Source of the DNA: Octopus sinensis | Lineage: Eukaryota | Assembly (NCBI RefSeq): GCF_006345805.1 | Contig: NW_021824384.1 | Coordinates: forward strand, 1 to 18,758 | Direction: 5' to 3' | Length of the DNA: 18,758 bases | Part shown: positions 1 through 18,758 of the stretch, piece by piece | How the letters are laid out: every line of letters starts with the position of its first letter | Position numbering within the stretch: the first letter of the stretch is position 1 | The notes under the pieces: model-generated | Databases searched by the model: none | What the model was told of the DNA's origin: nothing | Seen by the model: the letters and a program-made list of their open reading frames with translations, nothing else | Made by a program: the position numbers and the translations under genes

Positions 1-1620
1 CTTGATGATATGAGAGGTGAGTGAGATCGGACGGTAATTCACTGCAAGGGACTTGTTTCCCTTTTTGAAACTGGGACAAACAGACTGGGACAGAAGGTTT
101 TTTGGAATATAGCCAGCATCCAGTGAGTTTCTCCACAGATTAGCAAGGGGGAGATGCAAGTTGGTGTCGACACACCTTCAGGACACAAGCAGGGAACCTA
201 TCGGGGTCTACTGCTGATTGTGTGTTTTATTTCGTTTATCGCCGCTAAGACATCAGGGGCACTAAACGTTATGTCCGATATAGTGTGTTGGGGGTTGACA
301 TCACTGATACAGCCCAGATCGGCCATATCAGGATGCTGAAAACAGAGCAGTATTGTTTCTGCAGTATCTCGGCCATGGATTTGGCATTATCTTGGAGAGT
401 GCCAGTTCGTCAATTAGAGGGCCTACAGTGGAGACAGTGACCCTGCGTTTCCTCGCAAATGAAAAGAACACTTTAGGGTTGAGTTTGATTTTTTCAATGG
501 CCCACTTCTCCTCAGCTGATCTTTGGTTATGATGAAGGTCTTCATGCATTGTTGGAGGTTATATTTTTGGATTCAAGCAGTGCGATAGCCGTCGAATGGT
601 GTGTTGCTGTTGGCAGTACTTTAGTTTGTAATTTTTTGTTTGTTCTTTTTATTTTTCTGATAATGGTTTTTCTGTTGGGGGATTCTGCACTTTTTGTTCA
701 CAGGTCTGGTGGGAGTGTTTTGCACATATGTCTGTGACGGTGTCTACAAAGATCTGCCAAGATGTTTTATGGTTGGTGGAGATGTGTGTATGTGTAAAGG
801 ACCAGTCAACATGTGATAGCTCGTTCCTGATTGCTGCATCCAGTTGGCATTATGGAGATCCATGTTGTCAAATGGTGGCTGGAGGAAGGTCACCAGGATT
901 AGCTTTCGGCTGGTGGAATTTCATGTTACAGAGAAACCAGTCATGGTCTGAAAGAAGGGTTTTTTCCACTGTAACGTTATGTATAGTGTTAGTGTGGTTA
1001 CTAAACACTAGGTCCAAAATGTTCTGATGTCTTGTTGGTGCAAGGACAAGTTGGGACAAGAAAAACTCATTCGTAAAGTCGAAAAGTGACTCTGCTGCTT
1101 TTGTCAGCGGTTGAGGCGGGAGTGCTTGGTTTCAAACAGTTTGTAGTCCAGTCAACACAGGGTAGATTGAAGTCTCCCATCATGAGTATGTTGCTAGAAT
1201 GGCACTGTTGAATAAAGCACTTATGCTGTTGAGGCATTCTTTAAAGCACAGTATGGGTGTTTGGGGCGGCCTATAGAGCCCAATTACTGTCAGGTCATTG
1301 GCTTTGTTGTGCACGGTGACTGATTCACAGTAGCCGTTGGAGAATATACTATTTCCATCTGCCGTAAATGAATCATGCAGGAAAATGGCAGTTCCACCCT
1401 CCTCCTGCCGATACGATCCGCGCGGATGGTTGTGAAATTCTTCACTCTCACTTCGGCTTCCAAGTGGGAGTTGTCAAGGTGGGTCTCAGTGAGAATGAAG
1501 AAAGGGATGTGGTGTGAATGGTTACCAACCCAGTCTTCAATGAATTGGACCTTCCTTTTTGTGCATTTTGATGTAGATAAGGGCTGACACCTTGTGCATT
1601 GAGTAGGAATGTGGAGGTTA
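1..1620 (-). pseudogene. CR1-type ORF2 (APE endonuclease + start of reverse transcriptase), frameshifted
   Basis: Motifs read on the minus strand: FLLNAQG, ILTETHL, IRADR, GGTAIF, GLYRPP, MGDFNLP, PTRHQNILDLVFSN, LLSDH (endonuclease); IKLNPKVFFSFARK, MAEILQKQYCSVFS, DRFPACVLKVCRHQLASPL, FKKGNKSLAVNYRPISLTSHIIK (pre-RT/RT domain 0-1, ending at base 1). Confidence 0.92.
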
Positions 1621-2364: not shown

Positions 2365-2710
2365 GCTGTGTGTGTGTTTTGAATGTATGTAGGGCAGATT
2401 TAACGCCATATTTCTGGCATGTGTGCGATTGACAAAAAAAAAAAAGAGATAGCAGAAAAATGAAACGAAGAAATTCTTCTCTTAAATGCCTCATTTAAAA
2501 AACACATCCACCCAGTAGCATCTCGATAATATCAATGAAACACACGCATACAGTATTCATATTGACTATTTTCATGACATACGTACATGTGCCCTCGTAT
2601 CATTACATAAATATGTAAATGTATGTAGGGCTGGAGAGGTTTCGTAAATGTTAGTTCAAGGAATTAATTAGTCCACCAAGTACAAGGCTGGAAACTGGAT
2701 ACTGAGAGTT

Positions 2711-2740
2711 TGTATCTATTTATCTATCTATGGATCTATC

Positions 2741-2784
<44 letters not shown>

Positions 2785-2815
2785 GAATATGTATTTATCT
2801 ATGTATATGTGTGTA

Positions 2816-2856
<41 letters not shown>

Positions 2857-2867
2857 TATATACATAC

Positions 2868-2940
<73 letters not shown>

Positions 2941-2956
2941 TATATATATATATATA
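2711..2956. repeat. Compound (TATC)n/(TA)n/(TACA)n microsatellite
   Basis: Direct reading. Confidence 0.95.
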
Positions 2957-3208
2957 CAACAACAATTAAGGATGGCCTTAATAGGCCATTCGGCCCACTA
3001 GAAGAAGCAGCCAGGACTCAAACCGCTAAGTAGTAGTAATTCAGAAATTAGGTGAAAATTTAAAAACATTTACCCTAATTCATCTTTAGACGATGCATCG
3101 TTTCGGTGTTTTTAAGGCAAACCAGCTTAAATTAAATTAAGTCAATCTACCAAAGGCTACACCTCATCAGTAAAGAGACCAGGAGAGACGGATATACACG
3201 AGGCATCC

Positions 3209-3412
3209 ATATATATATATATTTATAATTACACATACGCGTTATATATTTATGTGCATGACTGTCTATCTATTTATGCGTATGAGTACAATGCCTCATT
3301 TAAAAAACACATCCACCCAGTAGCATCTCGATAATATCAATGTATGCATCTCGATAATATGTATGCATCGTCTAAAGATGAATTAGGGTAAATGTTTTTA
3401 AATTTTCACCTA
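3209..3412. other. Patchwork of templated copies from four sites in this window
   Basis: 3209-3290 = reverse complement of 15366-15447; 3290-3342 = 2485-2537; 3346-3360 = 3323-3337; 3363-3412 = reverse complement of 3049-3098. All match exactly by eye. Confidence 0.9.
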
Positions 3413-3510
3413 TATATATATATAAATTATATATCATATATATCATATTATATATATAATATATAAAAGATATATATATATTCATATATATATATATTAT
3501 ATCATATATA

Positions 3511-3721
3511 TACTCTTTTACTCTTTTACTTGTTTCAGTCATTTGACTGCGGCCATGCTGGAACACCGCCTTTAGTCGAGCAAATCGACCCCAGGACTTA
3601 TTCTTTGTAAGCCTAGTACTTATTCTATCGTTCTCTTTTGCTGAACCGTTAATTTTCGGGGACGCAAATACACCAGCATCGGTTGTCAAACGATGTTGGG
3701 GGGAACAAACAGACACACAAG

Positions 3722-3761
<40 letters not shown>

Positions 3762-3841
3762 CGACGGGCTTCTTTCAGTTTGTGTCTACCAAATCCACTC
3801 ACAAAACTTTGGTCGGCCCGAGGCTATAGTAGAAGACACTT
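3511..3841 (-). mobile_element. Octopus-type SINE lacking its tRNA head, with an internal CA/TA microsatellite
   Basis: Minus strand carries the core GATAGAATAAGTACTAG...CTGGGGTCGAT...TCGACT shared with other SINEs here, a terminal hairpin CAGTCA-AA-TGACTG and a (GTAAAAGA)n-like tail. I recognise the family from memory of octopus repeats. Confidence 0.8.
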
Positions 3842-4704: not shown

Positions 4705-5925
4705 ACGTCTTTCCCAAGAAATTCATTGACATTGTATGACAGTGACGTATGGCATGTTGACCTCAGTCCAAAACAACAACGAAATATCTGAGCTAACCTT
4801 TTTCTCAAATGGGGTGAAGAAGGGTTATGTCCTTGCTCGTATTCTGTTCAGTCACATATCTTTAGCCATGCTAACGGATGCCTTCAAAGACACAGACACA
4901 GGCTTAGACATTGGCATTACATATCCACACTGATGGCTCAATCTTTAGCCTCAAGTGGCTTGAATCCAAAACTAAGTTTATCATCAATGACTTCCAGTTT
5001 GCTGGTGGTTGTGCCTCAATGCTGCCTCCGAAGGTGACATGCGGCACAATGCTGGGAAGTTCTCTTGGCATTGCAGCAACTTCAGCCTCAACCTCAACAC
5101 AAACAATACGGAAGTAGTGTATCAGCTGACATTTTAAAAGCCTTACACAAAACCCGCCATTACCATTAACGGGCAACGCCTGAATGCAGTGGATATGTTT
5201 ACACTCCTTGGGAGCACACTCTTCACAAATGTTGTCATTGATGACAAAGTAAAGGCTCGTCTCGCTCAAGTGAAAGTTGCCTTTAGCAGACGCCATATGA
5301 ATGTGTGAAACAGGAAAGGCATCACGAGAAACAAGGACCTACTAAGGCGGTGAGCTGGCAGAAACGTTAGCACGCCGGGAGGAATGCGTAGCCGTATTTC
5401 GTCTGCCACTACGTTCTGAGTTCAAATTCCGCCGAGGTCGACTTTGCCTTTCATCATTTTGGGGTCGATTAAATAAGTAGCAGCTACGCACTGGGGTCGA
5501 TATAATCGACTTAATCCGTTTATCTGTCCTTGTTTGTCCTCTCTGTGTTTAACCCCTTGTCGGTAGTAAAGAAATAGGTATTTCGTCTGCCGTTACGTTC
5601 TGAGTTCAAATTCCGCCGAGGTCGATTTTGCCTTTCATCTTTTTGGGGTCGATAAATTAAGTACCAGTTACGCAGTGTGGTCGATGTAATGGACTTAATT
5701 CCTTTGTCTGTCCTAGTTTGTTCCCTCTATGTTTATCCCCTTGTGGGTAATAAAGAAATAAGAAACAAGTATCTACTAACGTCATACAAGGAAACTGAAA
5801 CTCTTCCATACAACCCGCTTCAGAAAACTTCTTGGAAAAAAGTGGCAAGACAAAATCCCAGATACTGAATTGCTCGCCAGTCCTAGGTCATCAAGCATCT
5901 ACATCATCCTCATGCTCACCTGGTT
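4705..5925 (+). mobile_element. Degenerate RTE-clade LINE fragment (RT core and downstream region), interrupted by a SINE
   Basis: Translates as FPKKFIDIV, SNGVKKGYVLARILFS, AMLTDAF, DFQFAGGCA (catalytic FADD mutated), ITINGQRLNAVDMFTLLGSTL, IDDKVKARLAQ and, after the SINE, RHTRKLKLFHTTRFRKLLGKKWQDKIPDTELL. Contains in-frame stops. Confidence 0.88.
5346..5760 (+). mobile_element. tRNA-type SINE with tandemly duplicated body and 19-bp target-site duplication
   Basis: Head GGCGGTGAGCTGGCAGAA (A-box-like), B-box GTTCAAATTCC at 5420. Body 5394-5577 repeated at 5578-5760. TSD AGAAACAAGGACCTACTAA (5327-5345) vs AGAAACAAGTATCTACTAA (5761-5779), 17/19 identical. Confidence 0.92.
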
Positions 5926-5937
5926 AATTATTATTAA

Positions 5938-6150
5938 GGTGGTGAGCTGGCAGAATTGTTAGCACACCAGGAAAATTGTTTAGCAGCATTTCGTTCGTCT
6001 TTACGTTCTGAGTTCAAATTCTGCCGAGGTCGGCTTTGGCTGTCAGCCCTTAGGGGTCTATAACATAAGTACTAGTCGAGCACTAGTATCGATGTAATCA
6101 GCTCTACCAAACCTTCTGGCCTTCTACCAAAATATGAAACCATTATTATT
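5938..6150 (+). mobile_element. tRNA-type SINE, same head/core as 5346 but different tail, ending in (ATT)n
   Basis: GGTGGTGAGCTGGCAGAA...GAGTTCAAATTCTGCCGAGGTCG...ATAAGTACTAG...TCGATGTAATC, tail CTGGCCTTCTACCAAAATATGAAACC-ATTATTATT. Confidence 0.85.
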
Positions 6151-6427: not shown

Positions 6428-6765
6428 TTGTCAGTCCGTCTATCTATCTGTCTGTCTGCTCGTCCACTCTGTGCTTGTCAGTTCGTCTATCTATCTGGTC
6501 GTCTGGTTGTCTGGTCGTCCACTCTGTGCTTGTCAGTTCGTCTATCTATCTGGTCGTCTGGTTGTCTGGTCGTCCACTCTGTGCTTGTCAGTTCGTCTAT
6601 CTATCTGGTCGTCTGGTTGTCTGGTCGTCCACTCTGTGCTTGTCAGTTCGTCTATCTATCTGGTCGTCTGGTTGTCTGGTCGTCCACTCTGTGCTTGTCA
6701 GTTCGTCTATCTATCTGGTCGTCTGGTCGTCTGGTCGTCCATTCTGTGCTTGTCAGTCCGTTTAT
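6428..6765. repeat. 55-bp minisatellite, about 6 copies
   Basis: Unit TCTATCTATCTGGTCGTCTGGTTGTCTGGTCGTCCACTCTGTGCTTGTCAGTTCG starts at 6486, 6541, 6596, 6651 (identical) and 6706 (variant), plus a degenerate first copy. Confidence 0.95.
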
Positions 6766-7193
6766 CTGCCTATCTATCTGCTATTTTATATCTCTTTATT
6801 TGACTGCTTTTTCTGCATGTCTATATCAGCACATATTTGTCTCTGCTTATATTTGTCTGTCTACTTTCCTGAGTGTCTCTCTCACTGAAATAAACTCTCT
6901 ATGTTTGTACGTCTATCCGTCTGTTTTTGTTTCGTTGCCTTTCGTTGTGATTGTCTGTATTGGCTGTGGAATTAGTGCTAAACTATTTAATCCAGCGAAC
7001 ATTAAAAAGCTAATTAGGATCAATTATGCGGTTGGAATTACAAGCGTGAGAATTATGTGATGGGAAAAAAAGAATCATACTCCATTAAGCAATATAATTT
7101 CGATTCTTTTGGTAAATCGGGAGAGAATAATTCAAAGAATATAAATTATTCTTAGAAGTCATCTGCAGAGGCTTTATCTAAGTATATCTGCCA

Positions 7194-7244
<51 letters not shown>

Positions 7245-7306
7245 ATCTATCTATCTATCTATCTATCTGTTCTATCTATCTATCTATCTATCTATTCCTG
7301 TCTATC

Positions 7307-7373
<67 letters not shown>

Positions 7374-7402
7374 AATCTATCTATCTATCTATCTATCCAT
7401 CG

Positions 7403-7484
<82 letters not shown>

Positions 7485-7543
7485 GTTATGTATCTATCTA
7501 TCTATCTATCTATCTACCCATCCATCTATGTATCTATCTATCT
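7194..7543. repeat. (TCTA)n microsatellite
   Basis: Direct reading. Confidence 0.97.
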
Positions 7544-8750
7544 ATGACGGTGAACAGTTGTGGTCGCCGTTTTGTGGGCACGCTTTCCCGCAGCTCGTCT
7601 CCATGACCGAACTGCAGTCGTGGATCAAAAAGGCCGAGGAAGGGCGAATGGCACCGCGAGTGTCGCGTTGCTCTCAAGCAACTCTGCCGTCCTGGGTCGA
7701 CCTTAGTGACTTCAACACAACCAAAGCATTCTATAGGGGTTAGTGGAGGGGAGGTACGACGACGAGCTCGGGGCGAACCTGGACGTCGACGAGGAGTACC
7801 TGACCCGCCTGTTCGGGACGACTTTCGGGCCAGGGCCCATGGACAACTTCCAGAGATCCTGGCCTGGCAGTGCTACCGAGAAGCGCTACCGTTCGGATAA
7901 GCTCTACAGACACGGCTCGAGAAACACGGGGCCGACCTGCCCGAGATGCGGTCAGAGCGACGAAACCGTTCTGCACGCAATCGTTCAGTGTCCACAATTT
8001 CCGACCTGTGGGCTTATGTCGAACAACTGCTGTCACGTGTGGACGAGTCGGTTTATATCAGCTGAGTCTATCGTCAATATTGTCACGGCCTCCTCCTTCA
8101 AACGGGAAGGAAGAGCTATTTTCATCATCCTTGTGGCTATGGCGAAGAATGTATCTGGTGGACGCGTCTGAAAGGATTGGAGACAAACACTTTCCTCTCT
8201 GGTCAATCTCTCATCAACTCTTCTTCAAGTACCACTTGAAAAGGAAAGTGAGAGTAGAGAGGCAAGTTTTGTCTAGCGAATGTTTTTAAAAAAAGATGGG
8301 TGAATGTAGCAAGAATGGCACGTATGAATGACGAAGCCACCTGAGCATAGTCCTATGAACCCAGAAATCGAAAACAGAGAGTTGCTTATTTGCAAAAAAA
8401 AAAAAAAAAAAAAAGAAATATAAAATGTGACTTCATTGACCGAGGTTACCGTGGTCTTTTCCGTAGGCTTTTCTTTCCACGGGTAAACCTCACCTGTCCT
8501 CCCCTTTACACTTCATATTGACATTTCTGTGATAACGATCCCTATTGATCAATTTTTTTTTTTTTCCTCTCCCCCCTTTTTTTTTTTTTTTTTAACCCCC
8601 CCTTTTTTTGTCCTCTTTCTCTCCTTTTACGATCCCTTTTGATCGAAACTCCCCTTCCTTTTTTTTTTTTTTTTTTAACCCCTTCAAAGAAAAGCTCTAC
8701 CTTGTAATTTGTTCTATCTGTGTGCAGCCCTGTGTGGCTAATAAAGAAAC
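7544..8750 (+). mobile_element. Tx1/L1-clade LINE, 5'-truncated: ORF2 C-terminus plus 3' UTR
   Basis: Reconstructed across frameshifts: TTKAFYRGLVEG...MDNFQRSLAWQCYREALP.RDKLYRHG...TCPRCGQSDETVLHAIVQCP (CxxC..H..C knuckle of L1/Tx1 ORF2)...AKECIWWTRLKG...RWVNVARM, stop TGA at 8356-8358. The pyrimidine-rich 3' UTR ends GCTAATAAAGAAAC. GC-rich relative to flanks. Confidence 0.88.
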
Positions 8751-9095: not shown

Positions 9096-9508
9096 TATTA
9101 TTGTTATTGTTATTGTTGTTGTTATCATCATCATCATTCATCATCACCACCACCAACACCACCACCACCACCATCATCATCATCACCACCGTCATCATCA
9201 CCACCATCATCACCACCATCACCATCATCACCACCATCACCATCATCATCACCACCATCATCACTACCATCATAACCATCATCATCATCACCACCATCAT
9301 CACTACCATCATAACCATCATCATCATCACCACCATCATCACCATCATCATCACCATCATCATCATCATCATCACCATCATCACCATCATCATCATCATC
9401 ACCATCATCATCACCATCATCATCATCATCACCATCATCATCACCATCATCATCATCATCATCACCACCATCATCATCATCCATCATCATCATCACCATC
9501 ATCACCAC

Positions 9509-9559
<51 letters not shown>

Positions 9560-9656
9560 TATCATCATTATCATCATTATCATCATTATCATCATTATCA
9601 TTATTATCATCATTATCATCATTATCATCATTATCATCATTGTTATCATTATTACT
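9064..9656. repeat. Compound (ATT)n/(ATC)n/(ACC)n trinucleotide tract
   Basis: Direct reading; source of the spurious poly-I/T/H/D/M ORFs. Confidence 0.97.
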
Positions 9657-9970: not shown

Positions 9971-10046
9971 AACATTTAGCCCTTCCTCCTACGATGTATA
10001 TTCGACCTTACCACTTGTTTAATTTTAATAATTAACAGTAACATAA

Positions 10047-10163
10047 GGCGGCGAGGTGGCGGAGTCGTTAGTATGCCGGTCAAAATGCTTAGCGGTATTT
10101 CGTCCGTCTTTACGTTCTGAGTTCACATTTTCTCCGAGGTTGATTGCCTTGCATCTTCTTGGC
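10047..10163 (+). mobile_element. 5' half of the same tRNA-type SINE
   Basis: GGCGGCGAGGTGGCGGAGTCGTTAG...AAATGCTTAGCGGTATTTCGTCCGTCTTTACGTTCTGAGTTCAC...CCGAGGTTGA. Confidence 0.8.
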
Positions 10164-11971: not shown

Positions 11972-12371
11972 CTAGCAGTATCGCCCGGCGTTGCTCGGGT
12001 TTGTAAGGGAAATAACTATATAAGCATTTTTAGAGAGTTATAGCCAAAAAATAGCAAAAAAATGCATTAAAAATGGAAAAAAAAATGATGGTAAATTTTT
12101 TTTTAAATCGTTGACTCATCGTAAACATTTTTAGAGAGTTACTTCCCTTATATAATAGCGAAAAAATGCATTAAAATGGAAAAAAATGATGGTAATTTTT
12201 TTTTTTAAATCGTAGACTCATCGTAGACGCGCGCTAATACCCAGAAGGGCTCGATATGAATTACGACTATAAGATACCCGGTTTTGGTTAAACTGCACCG
12301 CAAAATGTGGGAGTAGTTAGGAATCTAAATCGTAGGAGACAGACACACAACTTCACTTTTATATATAAAGA
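11972..12371 (-). mobile_element. Non-autonomous Helitron
   Basis: Minus strand starts TC (12371-12370), ends CTAG (11975-11972), carries hairpin CCCGAGCAACGCCGGG (11999-11984) just upstream of the 3' end, and sits between host A (12372) and T (11971) with no TSD. Internal ~100-bp direct repeat 12025-12123 / 12126-12225. Confidence 0.85.
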
Positions 12372-13358: not shown

Positions 13359-13451
13359 TATGTATGTGTATGTATGTATGTATGTATGTATGTATGTTTG
13401 TACGTATGTATGTATGTATGTATGTATGTATGTATGTATTTATGTATGTAC

Positions 13452-13482
<31 letters not shown>

Positions 13483-14425
13483 TGTATGTATGTATGTGTG
13501 TATGTATGTATGTATGTATGTATTTGTGTATGTATGTATGTATGTATTTATGTATGTATGTATGTATGTATGTATTTATGTATGTATGTATTTATGTATG
13601 TATGTATGTATGTATGTATGTATGTATTTATGTATGTAGTATGTATGTATGTATGTATGTATGTATTTATGTAGGTACGTTATGTGTATGTATGTATGTA
13701 TTTATGTATGTATGTATTTAGTATGTATGTATGTATGTATGTATGTATGTATGCATGTATGTATGTATGTATGTATGTATGTATGTATGTATGTATGTAT
13801 GTATGTATTTATGTATGTATGTATTTATGTATGTATGTATGTATGTATGTATGTATTTATGTATGTATGTATGTATGTATGTATTTATGTATGTATGTAT
13901 TTGTATGTATGTATGTATGTATGTATGTATGTATGTATTTATGTATGTATGTATGTATGTATGTATGTATGTATTTATGTATGTACGTATGTATGTATGT
14001 ATGTATGTATGTATTTATGTATGTATGTATTTATGTATGTATGTATGTATGTATGTATGTATGTATGTATGCATGTATGTATGTATGTATGTATTTATGT
14101 ATGTATGTATGTATGTATGTATTTATGTTATGTATGTATTTATGTATGTATGTATGTATGATGTATGTATGTATGATGCATGTATGTATGTATGTATGTT
14201 GTATGTATGCAGTATGTATGTCTGATTGATGTATGTATGTATGTATGTATGTATGTATTTATGTATGTATTATGATGTGTATGTATTGAGTTTGTATGTA
14301 TGTATGTATGTATGTATGTATGTATGTATGTATGTATGTGATGTATGTATTTATGTATGTATGTATGTATGTATGTATGCATGTATTTATGTTTGTATGT
14401 ATGTTTGTATGTATGTATGTATGAT
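13359..14425. repeat. ~1.07-kb (TATG)n microsatellite with TATT variants
   Basis: Direct reading. Confidence 0.97.
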
Positions 14426-14460
14426 GTTTGTATATATATATATACTAATATTTTTATATA

Positions 14461-14900: not shown

Positions 14901-15428
14901 AATGTATACGTACGTGAAGGAGCGTTCTTATGTTTAGAGATATCCGTGTGTATATTTATGATATAATAATTTCTTATTTGCCGAAATAATAACGGAGCTC
15001 TTGTTATTGACTTCATTCTTGCCATATCTGCGCCATTATCATCAAACGTTGCAAGCGCTGAACATCTGCTGCAACACTCACAACTTTCCAGAACGGTTCT
15101 ATACCAGTTCTTTAGTAAACAGAAGACATTTTATGTATTCTATATTTTATCTCTAAAAATACAAAGTGCAATGTCTCCTCCATCTCGATTTACATTTCTT
15201 AAATATCTCACGGCAGAGATAATTTTTTGCTACCCCGATCCGTCTATCTGTCTGCTGGTCTGCCTGTTAGCTTGTTGGTCTATCTGTCTGTATGACTCGC
15301 TTTCTCACTCCGTCTCTCTTTCTGTCTCCTTCTCTTTCTCTCCCTTTCTCCCCTCTCTCTCTCTGTGTACTCATACGCATAAATAGATAGACAGTCATGC
15401 ACATAAATATATAACGCGTATGTGTAAT

Positions 15429-15466
<38 letters not shown>

Positions 15467-15780
15467 CATAATACATATTTATATACATACACATTATATA
15501 TCTATATAAATATACGCATATATATATATATACTATATATATATACTATATATATATGCATATATATAAATAATTATATATATTTATATAATATATAAAT
15601 ATATATATAATCTATAATATATATATATATATGTATGTATATGTATGTGATCACATACACTCACACACACATGCACAAACATATACAACGGTAGTGTCGG
15701 TAGGCTTCGTCACACAGGCTATATATACAATTTAATCCCTAGTGTGTACGTTACTTTTCATATATATACACACATACATA

Positions 15781-17138: not shown

Positions 17139-17139
<1 letters not shown>
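16865..17139 (-). mobile_element. Second, shorter copy of the Tx1 family (last ORF2 codons + most of 3' UTR)
   Basis: Reverse complement aligns to 8328-~8670: ATGACGAAGTCACTTTGAGCATAATCCTATGAACCC...ATTGACCGAGGTTACCGTGGT..TTTCCGTAGGCTTTTCTTTC...TACGATCCCTTTTGAT. Lacks the terminal ~60 nt of the first copy. Confidence 0.88.
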
Positions 17140-17226
<87 letters not shown>

Positions 17227-17254
17227 CAGAGAGAGAGAGAGAGAGAGAGAGAGG

Positions 17255-17286
<32 letters not shown>

Positions 17287-17382
17287 GCCAGACAGATAGA
17301 TAGATGATAGATAGATAGATAGAGAGATAGATAGATAGATAGATAGACAGACATACAGACAGAGAGATAGATAGATAGATAT

Positions 17383-17434
<52 letters not shown>

Positions 17435-17448
17435 GCAGACAGATGGAC

Positions 17449-17486
<38 letters not shown>

Positions 17487-17894: not shown

Positions 17895-18068
17895 ATCATC
17901 ATCATCATCATCATCATCATCACCATCATCGCCAACATCGTGAACAAAGACGTTGAAATCACAGGCATTAGCAAAGCGATTGCCTTCGCTACCACCATCA
18001 CTGATATCAATATGAACCCTCTCAACAACACCATGACTACTACTACAACTACTGCTACTACAACTACA

Positions 18069-18124
<56 letters not shown>

Positions 18125-18449
18125 CACCATCAACACCTCACCACAATTACGATGAACTCCCTATCAACCTCATTTACCACAATGAGCACAACTGCTACTT
18201 TCACTATCACCACCACCACCACCACATTAACTCTATCATTACCACTGATACCATAAAAAGTACCACAAGCACCACCCCCATGATAAACAGCACCACTGCC
18301 GCCGCCATCATTATCATCGTAATCACCATCATCATCACCATCATCATCATCATCATCATCATCATCTTCTTCATCTTCATCATCATCATCATCATCATCT
18401 TCATCTTCATCATCTTCAACATCATCATCATCATCATCATCACAATCAC

Positions 18450-18481
<32 letters not shown>

Positions 18482-18758
18482 CAATCACCATCATCATCAT
18501 CATCATCATCAGCGCCATCTTCATCTTCATCATCATCACCATCTTCATCATCATCTTCATCATCATCGCTAACAGCAACACCTCTGCCACCAAGCCTTCC
18601 ACCGCCGCCATTAACACCACCACCACCAACAACAACAACAACAACAACATCAACACTACAAATACCCCCCTCCACCATCACCAACAACTACAACCACAGC
18701 AACAACGCAACCGGTACCACCATCGGTACCCCCCCCCACCTACCACCACCAAACCACC
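17895..18758. repeat. Compound (ATC)n/(ACT)n/(ACC)n/(AAC)n trinucleotide region
   Basis: Direct reading; interrupted by short degenerate stretches. Confidence 0.93.

What the first reader, a model, noticed from the sequence alone, without database searches (positions are those of the whole stretch)
3209..3412. 204-bp patchwork of four templated segments, one from 12 kb away
Seen: between two TA tracts the sequence is composed of 82 bp inverted from 15366-15447, 53 bp direct from 2485-2537, a 15-bp local re-copy (3346-3360 = 3323-3337) and 50 bp inverted from 3049-3098. The first donor starts in a TA repeat, and the first junction shares 1 nt. The last switch occurs at ATGCATC, which lies in the perfect palindrome CGATGCATCG (3091-3100). 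All copies look identical to their donors, so the event is recent. Established: serial templated insertions with microhomology are the signature of polymerase-theta end joining or MMBIR/FoSTeS. Inference: a break in a (TA)n tract was repaired by multi-template switching, and the 15.4-kb site was spatially close.
Basis: partly seen in the sequence, partly recalled or inferred. Interest (0 to 1): 0.75.

Follow-up and report, generated by a model that had tools for sequence, protein, structure and literature searches.

The report
Patchwork DNA-repair scar in an octopus TA repeat
A 204-base stretch beside a TA repeat in an octopus-like genome is stitched from exact copies of three other places in the same 19 kb, which looks like the scar of one copy-and-switch DNA repair event; this kind of mutation is already known, and here it has no apparent function.

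Summary
3209-3290 is the reverse complement of 15366-15447 (82 nt). 3290-3342 equals 2485-2537 (53 nt). 3346-3360 equals 3323-3337 (15 nt). 3363-3412 is the reverse complement of 3049-3098 (50 nt). All are 100% identical to their donors, and only TAT and GT are left unassigned.

Apart from a minisatellite, these are the three longest non-low-complexity exact repeats in the window, and all land in one 204-bp block. Their ends are sharp, with no diverged homology beyond them.

The window is octopus-like, repeat-dense, non-coding DNA. The right-hand TA tract abuts a truncated octopus SINE.

The best reading is one recent compound template-switch insertion at a TA tract. The long, error-free, distant segments fit MMBIR/FoSTeS/SDSA-type synthesis better than classical polymerase-theta inserts. 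The 30-nt core (3340-3369) does look like iterative microhomology re-priming.

New details: donor A starts in a 26-nt TA run and stops 1-2 nt before a pyrimidine tract. The palindrome is 12 bp and intact only at the donor.

I could not test read support, an empty allele or genome-wide copy number, because no octopus genome or reads were searchable. An assembly chimera and a repeat family therefore remain open but less likely. This is a new example of a known kind, of modest interest.

The parts
3209..3290 (.). Segment A: 82-nt inverted exact copy of 15366-15447. The first 14 nt are a TA run.
   Evidence: Exact match. Blastn shows no extension beyond it.
3290..3342 (.). Segment B: 53-nt direct exact copy of 2485-2537. 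It shares 1 nt (A3290) with segment A.
3343..3345 (.). Filler TAT. It is unassigned, or can be read as T plus the start of ATGCATC templated from the start of D.
3346..3360 (.). Segment C: 15-nt direct re-copy of 3323-3337 (equals 2518-2532 in donor B).
3361..3362 (.). Filler GT. It is part of the 11-nt repeat ATGTATGCATC (3340-3350 = 3359-3369).
3363..3412 (.). Segment D: 50-nt inverted exact copy of 3049-3098. With its donor it forms a perfect 50-bp stem with a 264-nt spacer.
   Evidence: Exact match. DNA fold: -66 kcal/mol, z = -9.75.
2485..2537 (+). Donor of B, embedded in non-repetitive sequence (2365-2712) between two TA tracts.
3049..3098 (+). Donor of D, embedded in non-repetitive sequence (2957-3208).
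3090..3101 (.). 12-bp perfect palindrome ACGATGCATCGT. Copy D stops or starts 3 nt past its centre. The palindrome is intact only here, not in the mosaic.
   Evidence: Self reverse-complement hit. Sequence.
15366..15447 (+). Donor of A.
15434..15459 (.). 26-nt perfect TA run in which donor A begins. The mosaic keeps 14 nt of it.
15296..15364 (+). Pyrimidine-rich tract (94% C/T over 69 nt; the last 34 nt are pure C/T) ending 1-2 nt from the end of donor A. It is a candidate polymerase block that triggered the A to B switch.
   Evidence: The triggering role is inference.
3411..3512 (.). Degenerate TA-rich tract to the right of the mosaic. It shares TA (3411-3412) with the end of D.
   Evidence: TRF..
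3513..3841 (-). Truncated octopus SINE whose end abuts the TA-rich tract. It is context for the break site.
   Evidence: 76-98% identity to 9 copies in 20 kb of Octopus vulgaris OX597840.1. Alignment.

Best explanation
The block is the scar of one recent compound template-switch insertion in the germline of an octopus-like animal.

Inferred sequence of events:
1. A break or a stalled, dissociated nascent strand arose in a TA tract next to a SINE end.
2. Its 3' end annealed to another (TA)n run 12 kb away, on the opposite strand, and copied 68 nt of unique sequence. It fell off 1-2 nt before a long pyrimidine tract.
3. It re-primed with 1 nt of homology 724 bp upstream of the break (800 bp upstream of where the copy now sits) and copied 53 nt.
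4. It made several short abortive re-primings between two templates that share GCATC.
5. It copied 50 nt in inverted orientation from 265-314 bp upstream, starting at the palindromic hexamer ATGCAT. This last step may have been a snap-back on the same strand.
6. It was captured by the other TA end through a 2-nt TA overlap.

The same product can be read in the opposite direction, or as both ends being extended and meeting at the 11-nt ATGTATGCATC.

What is shown: the segment identities, orientations, junction overlaps and the features flanking the donors. What is inferred: the break, the order of steps and the polymerase.

The long error-free segments point to a BIR/SDSA-type polymerase (MMBIR/FoSTeS). 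The 30-nt core resembles polymerase-theta-style iterative priming. The block has no evident function. It lies in non-coding, repeat-dense DNA.
For: - Four exact copies with five unassigned bases fill the block.
- They are the only long non-low-complexity exact repeats in the window besides a minisatellite and SINEs, and all fall within 204 bp.
- Copy ends are sharp, with no flanking diverged homology, unlike transposon copies (contrast the SINE hits).
- Junction overlaps: up to 14 nt (TA), 1 nt, GCATC or the ATGTATGCATC re-use, and 2 nt (TA).
- Donor A runs from a 26-nt TA run to a pyrimidine tract.
- The 12-bp palindrome is complete at donor D and truncated in the mosaic.
- All segments have 0 differences, so there is no staggered decay.
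- Known precedent: human germline insertions built from three templates, with 2-12 bp of microhomology (PMC8421209).
- Known precedent: single-nucleotide priming and reiterated priming (PMC5068794).
- Known precedent: AT/TA repeats form cruciforms that are cut by Mus81 (PMC12972899).
- The window has no N, and a 1.1-kb (TATG)n and a 0.5-kb (ATC)n array are assembled through. This implies long reads that would span the 204-bp block.
Against: - No reads, second haplotype, other individual or sister species could be examined, so neither the junctions nor an empty allele is verified.
- Two junctions have no clean microhomology unless re-read as overlapping tracts.
- Nearer TA tracts (2150-2364, 2817-2956) were not visibly used, and the choice of the 15.4-kb tract is unexplained.
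- Perfect identity could in principle be produced by short-read polishing with mis-mapped donor reads.
- Genome-wide copy number of the block and its donors is unknown.
Confidence: 0.68

Rival explanations
1. Assembly or sequencing artefact. A chimeric molecule or read (polymerase template-jumping in vitro), or a faulty local reassembly or polishing step in a TA-rich stretch, was fixed into the consensus. The animal's DNA has a plain TA tract here.
For: - TA-rich, microsatellite-dense context where aligners and polishers fail.
- Perfect identity to the donors is also what mis-mapped polishing reads would give.
- No independent sequence of this locus could be found.
Against: - Junction overlaps of 0-2 nt cannot come from a k-mer graph walk, so a physical chimeric molecule would be needed, and it would have to beat the consensus of the other reads.
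- The window is gap-free through kilobase microsatellites, which implies long reads that span the block and its two local donors together.
- The switch points sit at biologically meaningful features: a TA run, a pyrimidine tract and a palindrome.
- No other such patch occurs in 18.7 kb.
Confidence: 0.13
2. Several separate events at one fragile spot. Independent small duplications or insertions (A, B, C, D) accumulated over time at the same TA tract, rather than arising in one compound event.
For: - TA tracts are recurrent break sites (PMC12972899).
- The C region can be read as a later 19-bp tandem duplication, since 3340-3350 = 3359-3369.
Against: - All segments are 100% identical to their donors, with no graded divergence.
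- They abut with at most 3 nt between them.
- Three independent long insertions within 204 bp, and none elsewhere in 18.7 kb, is unparsimonious.
Confidence: 0.08
3. Dispersed repeat. 3049-3412 (or 3051-3410 with TA target duplications) is a foldback or MITE-like element with 50-bp terminal inverted repeats, or the 204-bp block is a unit of a repeat family. The 'donors' would then be fragments of that family.
For: - A perfect 50-nt inverted repeat pair bounded by TA on both sides.
- Octopus vulgaris has recently active Tc1-mariner and MITE families (PMC13282606).
- A 48-nt perfect inverted repeat also occurs in the sampled O. vulgaris locus, L001 4602-4714.
Against: - The TA at both ends is automatically part of any inverted repeat, so it is not evidence of a target duplication.
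- The interior would consist of local unique sequence plus exact copies of two other nearby loci, which a mobile element does not explain.
- The left arm is continuous with unique flank and completes a 12-bp palindrome across its supposed inner boundary.
- There is no further copy in the window or in 20 kb of O. vulgaris.
- There is none among the 5.8 billion predicted proteins searched with six-frame peptides.
- There is none in the metagenome contigs. All the searches outside the window are weak negatives.
Confidence: 0.05
4. Reverse polarity. The mosaic is the original sequence, and pieces of it were copied out to 2485, 3049 and 15366.
For: Sequence identity alone is symmetric.
Against: - It needs three separate insertions whose source boundaries happen to abut exactly.
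- The palindrome would have to arise by chance at the 3098/3099 junction.
- Donors B and D sit seamlessly in unique sequence.
Confidence: 0.03

Closest known systems
MMBIR/FoSTeS templated insertions (MMB-TI), including multi-template germline events in humans (Osia et al. 2021, PMC8421209)
   Same: An insertion composed of several abutting segments copied from nearby templates, in direct and inverted orientation, joined at short or imperfect microhomology. Such events persist as neutral germline variants.
   Different: The templates scanned for in that work lie within 100 bp of the insertion. Here they lie 9 bp, 265 bp, 724 bp and 12 kb away. One junction has only 1 nt of overlap, and two have 2-3 nt fillers. 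The host is a cephalopod and the site is a SINE-associated TA tract.
Polymerase-theta-mediated end joining templated inserts (van Schendel et al. 2016, PMC5068794; Kent et al. 2016, PMC4912351)
   Same: Single-nucleotide priming, reiterated prime-extend-dissociate cycles, overlapping templated tracts, snap-back inverted copies and a few untemplated bases. The 3340-3369 core and the ATGCAT-primed start of D fit this picture.
   Different: Typical theta inserts are under 25 bp (mean about 10, median 7). About 85% are primed within 10 bp of the break, about 3% come from distant sites, and errors run at about 1 in 30 nt. Here the segments are 50-82 nt, lie up to 12 kb away, and show 0 errors in about 200 nt.
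Short-range template-switch mutations, four-point model (Loytynoja and Goldman 2017, PMC5453318)
   Same: Segment D is an inverted copy of nearby sequence that creates a new perfect inverted repeat and hairpin, as that model describes.
   Different: That model covers a single switch-and-return that replaces sequence locally. Here there are at least four switches, two direct copies and one 12-kb donor, with a net insertion of about 190 bp.
Patchwork 'filler DNA' at plant double-strand breaks and transposon-excision sites (recalled from memory, not checked here)
   Same: Fillers assembled from several short stretches copied from sequences near the break. They are explained by abortive synthesis-dependent strand annealing.
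   Different: That case is not an animal germline.
MITE or foldback transposable element
   Same: A perfect 50-nt inverted repeat pair flanked by TA.
   Different: No family members were found. The interior is made of local sequence and copies of neighbouring loci. The left arm is continuous with its flank.

Membership tests
MMBIR/FoSTeS-type multi-template insertion | The insertion consists of two or more segments copied from other genomic templates, abutting one another, in direct and/or inverted orientation. | tested here: met
   Four exact segments (two inverted, two direct) and 5 unassigned bases.
MMBIR/FoSTeS-type multi-template insertion | Microhomology (typically 2-12 bp) or imperfect microhomology at the switch junctions. 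| tested here: inconclusive
   Overlaps are up to 14 nt (TA), 1 nt, 0 (filler TAT) or 5 (GCATC), 0 (filler GT) or 7-11 (ATGCATC / ATGTATGCATC), and 2 nt (TA). The values depend on how the core is parsed.
MMBIR/FoSTeS-type multi-template insertion | Templates lie in cis and nearby (same or neighbouring replication forks). | tested here: met
   Donors lie 9 bp, 265 bp, 724 bp and 11.95 kb from the block on the same contig.
MMBIR/FoSTeS-type multi-template insertion | The event arises from a collapsed fork or a one-ended break and depends on BIR factors (Pol delta, Pif1, Rev1 and others). | not testable with these tools
   This needs genetics. Only the TA-tract context and the literature on AT/TA fragility bear on it.
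Polymerase-theta (TMEJ) templated insertion | The insert matches flank sequence and is primed by at least 1 nt of identity. | tested here: met
   The criterion is from PMC5068794.
Polymerase-theta (TMEJ) templated insertion | Inserts are short (mostly under 25 bp) and the template lies within about 10 bp of the break. | tested here: not met
   A, B and D are 82, 53 and 50 nt, with templates 265 bp to 12 kb away. Only C (15 nt, 9 bp away) fits.
Polymerase-theta (TMEJ) templated insertion | Error-prone templated synthesis (about 1 error per 30 nt in inserts). | tested here: not met
   0 mismatches in about 200 copied nt. The caveat is that polishing could mask errors.
Polymerase-theta (TMEJ) templated insertion | Dependence on POLQ. 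| not testable with these tools
   This needs a mutant background.
MITE / TIR transposon | Terminal inverted repeats. | tested here: met
   50-nt perfect arms at 3049-3098 and 3363-3412.
MITE / TIR transposon | A target-site duplication distinct from the inverted repeats. | tested here: inconclusive
   TA lies at both outer ends, but it is palindromic and so belongs to the inverted repeat itself. The next bases differ (…AAAT on the left, TATA… on the right).
MITE / TIR transposon | Multiple dispersed copies of the whole unit. | tested here: not met
   None in the window, in 20 kb of O. vulgaris, in the metagenome contigs or in the protein collection. The sampling is very limited, and the source genome itself could not be searched.
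Assembly chimera | The junctions are not supported by independent spanning reads. | not testable with these tools
   No reads or alternative assemblies are reachable.

The most novel reading that the evidence does not exclude
Octopus genomes are unusually rich in TA and other microsatellites, many of them seeded at SINE ends. Breaks in these tracts may be healed routinely by multi-template copy synthesis. Patchworks like this one would then be common genome-wide, and would form a distinct mutational process that duplicates, inverts and disperses 50-100-bp pieces of unique sequence over kilobases. That process would create new inverted repeats and could shuffle regulatory fragments. The present block would be its first recognised instance.
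Probability: 0.15. Interest if true: 0.55.

Novelty: new member of a known kind. Interest (0 to 1): 0.3.

Why it matters
If it is real, this is an unusually clean natural record of a serial template-switch repair event. Every base but five is traceable, and the switch points sit at a TA run, a pyrimidine tract and a palindrome. It therefore shows which sequence features start and stop such synthesis in an animal germline outside the usual model organisms.

It also created a new perfect 50-bp inverted repeat, which is itself a potential fragile site. That illustrates how one repair scar can seed further instability.

It does not reveal a new mechanism, and it has no evident function. Its practical value is as a seed pattern for a genome-wide scan of cephalopod TA tracts.

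Tried and rejected
Searches for an independent copy of the locus or of the block all came back empty.
- The 120-aa ORF across the D/TA junction (3372-3734, minus strand) is not on record, and neither are nine other window ORFs.
- A homology search with that ORF hit only SINE-encoded octopus proteins.
- A 1273-aa concatenate of all six-frame peptides from 2957-3415 and 2365-2712 gave no hit at E<=1.
- Exact DNA scans for the unique left flank found nothing in the metagenome or prokaryote genome contigs.
- Scans for the D arm (metagenome contigs) and for the SINE (viral contigs) also found nothing.
- These collections hold essentially no octopus DNA, so the negatives are weak.

I fetched 20 kb of O. 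vulgaris (L001) and an ENA contig (L002). Only the SINEs match the window.

I looked for diverged homology beyond the segment ends, which would indicate a transposon origin. There is none.

I looked for other templated patches in the window. There are none.

tRNA and Rfam scans of the window were empty. Pfam gave only sub-threshold LINE endonuclease and zf-RVT hits.

I could not fix the direction of synthesis. Reading the top strand from the left end, the bottom strand from the right end, or both ends extended are all compatible with the junctions.

Full report
**1. The observation**

I read 2400-3600 and 15250-15560 and tested every claimed identity by exact string search. All of them hold.

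| Segment | Mosaic coordinates | Donor | Length | Orientation |
|---|---|---|---|---|
| A | 3209-3290 | 15366-15447 | 82 nt | inverted |
| B | 3290-3342 | 2485-2537 | 53 nt | direct |
| C | 3346-3360 | 3323-3337 (= 2518-2532) | 15 nt | direct |
| D | 3363-3412 | 3049-3098 | 50 nt | inverted |

There are no mismatches. A and B overlap by one base (A at 3290). Five bases are unassigned: TAT at 3343-3345 and GT at 3361-3362.

**2. Is it more than chance?**

The window is extremely rich in microsatellites (67 TRF rows), so I filtered exact repeats by periodicity.

- Of 4982 maximal exact repeat pairs of at least 20 nt, only 11 are not low-complexity.
- Four of the 11 belong to a 55-bp minisatellite (6453-6767) and four to SINE copies.
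- The remaining three are A, B and D. The picture is the same at k=15.
- So the three longest ordinary exact repeats in 18.7 kb all land, abutting, in one 204-bp block.
- A sensitive blastn (word 7, no dust filter) shows that each match stops dead. There is no weaker homology beyond any end, in the block or in any donor context.
- Transposon copies behave differently. The SINE at 3513-3841 matches nine places in 20 kb of Octopus vulgaris at 76-98% identity over hundreds of bases.

**3. Context**

The window is eukaryotic.

- The sequence from 3513 is an abundant octopus SINE. The best protein hit is an O. vulgaris hypothetical protein that the SINE encodes.
- The rest of the window is microsatellites, minisatellites, SINE pieces and degraded LINE fragments with sub-threshold Pfam endonuclease and zf-RVT hits.
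- There are no tRNA or Rfam hits, and I could identify no host gene.
- The TA-rich tract to the right of the mosaic (3411-3512) abuts the end of the SINE. TA-rich sequence sits at the same SINE end in two of four other copies aligned, so the tract may have grown from the SINE end.
- The 'left TA tract' is just 14 nt (3209-3222) and is itself part of copy A.
- The window has no N, and a 1083-bp (TATG)n and a 517-bp (ATC)n array are assembled through. I infer a long-read assembly.

**4. Anatomy of the junctions**

- **J0, left flank to A.** The mosaic has CATCC(AT)7TTATAATTAC. The donor, reverse-complemented, has GTGT(AT)13TTATAATTAC. The switch lies anywhere in up to 14 nt of TA.
- **J1, A to B.** There is one shared A. 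Past this point donor A runs straight into a pyrimidine tract: 15331-15364 is pure C/T, and 15296-15364 is 94% C/T. Such tracts are known polymerase blocks (my own knowledge, not checked here).
- **J2 to J4, the core at 3340-3369.** Its sequence is ATG TAT GCATCTCGATAATAT GT ATGCATC.
  - It contains ATGTATGCATC twice (3340-3350 and 3359-3369).
  - B (GTAGCATCTCGATAATAT) and D (ATGCATCGTC) share GCATC.
  - It can therefore be read as short abortive extensions that alternate between the B and D templates.
  - A simple B-D joint through ATG would have given CAATGCATCGTC. The observed sequence carries 20 extra nt there.
- **Start of D.** D begins at ATGCAT, the centre of a 12-bp perfect palindrome, ACGATGCATCGT, at 3090-3101. 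A 3' end finishing in ATGCAT can pair with ATGCAT on its own strand and copy leftwards. That yields exactly CGTCTAAAG…, so a snap-back in cis is possible.
- **J5, D to the right TA tract.** The two share TA.

D and its donor now form a perfect 50-bp stem with a 264-nt loop (DNA fold -66 kcal/mol, z = -9.75).

**5. Polarity and age**

Three arguments make the block the recipient.

- Three independent copy boundaries coincide inside it.
- The palindrome is whole only at donor D, while the mosaic has TGT in place of ACG.
- Donors B and D are seamless parts of unique sequence.

There are no differences across about 185 nt (A+B+D). The O. vulgaris repeat study gives calibration points of JC 0.065 at about 18 My, 0.09 at about 25 My and 0.2 at about 56 My (PMC13282606). 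That is about 3.6e-3 per site per My per lineage. A copy-donor pair would then collect about 1.3 differences per My, which puts the event under roughly 2 My (95% bound). This is inference. It assumes the rate applies to this species and that polishing did not homogenise the copies.

**6. Mechanism**

The best reading is one compound template-switch event at a TA tract.

Polymerase theta alone fits poorly.

- In C. elegans its inserts are mostly under 25 bp, with a mean of about 10.
- About 85% are primed within 10 bp of the break, and about 3% come from distant sites.
- Errors run at about 1 in 30 nt (PMC5068794).
- The median tract length for mammalian Pol theta is 7 bp (PMC4912351).

Segments of 50-82 nt, error-free, from 265 bp to 12 kb away fit processive BIR/SDSA-type synthesis with switching (MMBIR/FoSTeS). 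Human germline examples with three templates are documented (PMC8421209).

The core does show theta-like features: 1-nt priming, overlapping tracts, a few untemplated bases and a possible snap-back.

AT/TA repeats form hairpins and cruciforms that are cut by Mus81-Mms4 and repaired by recombination (PMC12972899). This makes a break in the tract plausible, but it is not shown here.

Switches that stayed inside TA tracts would be invisible, so four is a lower bound on the number of switches. I cannot say why the 15.4-kb TA run was used visibly rather than the nearer ones at 2150-2364 and 2817-2956.

**7. Rivals**

- **Assembly chimera (0.13).** It cannot be excluded without reads. However, overlaps of 0-2 nt rule out a k-mer graph artefact. 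Long reads would span the block together with donors B and D. The switch points also sit at biologically meaningful features.
- **Sequential events (0.08).** Uniform 100% identity and tight abutment argue against this.
- **MITE or repeat family (0.05).** The 50-nt inverted arms with TA ends resemble one. The TA is inherent to any inverted repeat, though. The interior is local sequence plus copies of neighbouring loci, and no other copy was found anywhere I could look. Sampling of octopus DNA was tiny.
- **Reverse polarity (0.03).**

**8. What could not be done**

No octopus genome, reads or second haplotype is reachable with these tools. Window ORFs are not in the protein collection. Six-frame peptides of the region hit nothing. 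DNA pattern scans of the viral, metagenome and prokaryote collections found nothing.

**9. Verdict**

Multi-template switching is the best explanation, MMBIR-like rather than purely theta-mediated, and validation in reads is pending.
- This is a new example of a known kind of mutation, in neutral-looking DNA.
- Interest is modest (0.3). It would rise only if a genome-wide scan showed that such patchworks are a regular product of octopus TA tracts.

Noticed in passing
window 3513-3841 (also 5344-5767, 5934-6099, 10037-10157): Copies and fragments of an abundant octopus SINE. The one at 3513-3841 is truncated at a TA/CA microsatellite. The piece at 5394-5760 is a 184-bp unit repeated twice in tandem at 87% identity. 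Nine copies occur in 20 kb of O. vulgaris (L001).
   Followed up: partly
window 6453-6767: A 55-bp minisatellite with 5.7 copies at 98% identity. It contains the longest exact repeats in the window (213 nt).
   Followed up: no
window 13359-14441 and 9124-9640: Very long microsatellites: (TATG) x about 274 over 1083 bp, and (ATC) x about 172 over 517 bp. Both are assembled without gaps, which suggests a long-read assembly.
   Followed up: no
window 7194-7545 and 17139-17483: An (ATCT)n array and a (TAGA)n array form a 187-nt inverted repeat, 85% complementary, with arms 9.8 kb apart.
   Followed up: no
window about 2161-2200: The TA tract is interrupted twice by GGCCGG, 19 bp apart (…TATGGCCGGTATATATATATTATGGCCGGTATA…). 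This is a small duplication inside a TA tract, possibly another minor repair or slippage scar.
   Followed up: no
window 328-1240 (- strand) and 7743-8171 (+ strand): Degraded LINE fragments. Pfam hits are sub-threshold: Exo_endo_phos_2 (E 0.003-0.006) and zf-RVT (E 0.007).
   Followed up: partly
window 12021-12225: An A/T-rich 101-bp unit repeated twice in tandem at 85% identity.
   Followed up: no
window 17895-18655: Coding-like trinucleotide arrays (ACT, CATCAT, CAA) that give long poly-Thr, poly-Asp and poly-His ORFs on either strand. No homologue was sought.
   Followed up: no
L001 4602-4714 (O. vulgaris OX597840.1): A perfect 48-nt inverted repeat with a 17-nt spacer in an unrelated O. 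vulgaris locus. Long perfect hairpins are therefore not unique to the mosaic site.
   Followed up: no
window 15366 / 15296-15364: The end of donor A lies 1-2 nt from a 34-nt pure (69-nt, 94%) pyrimidine tract. This suggests that the copying polymerase dissociated at a structure-forming purine/pyrimidine tract.
   Followed up: partly
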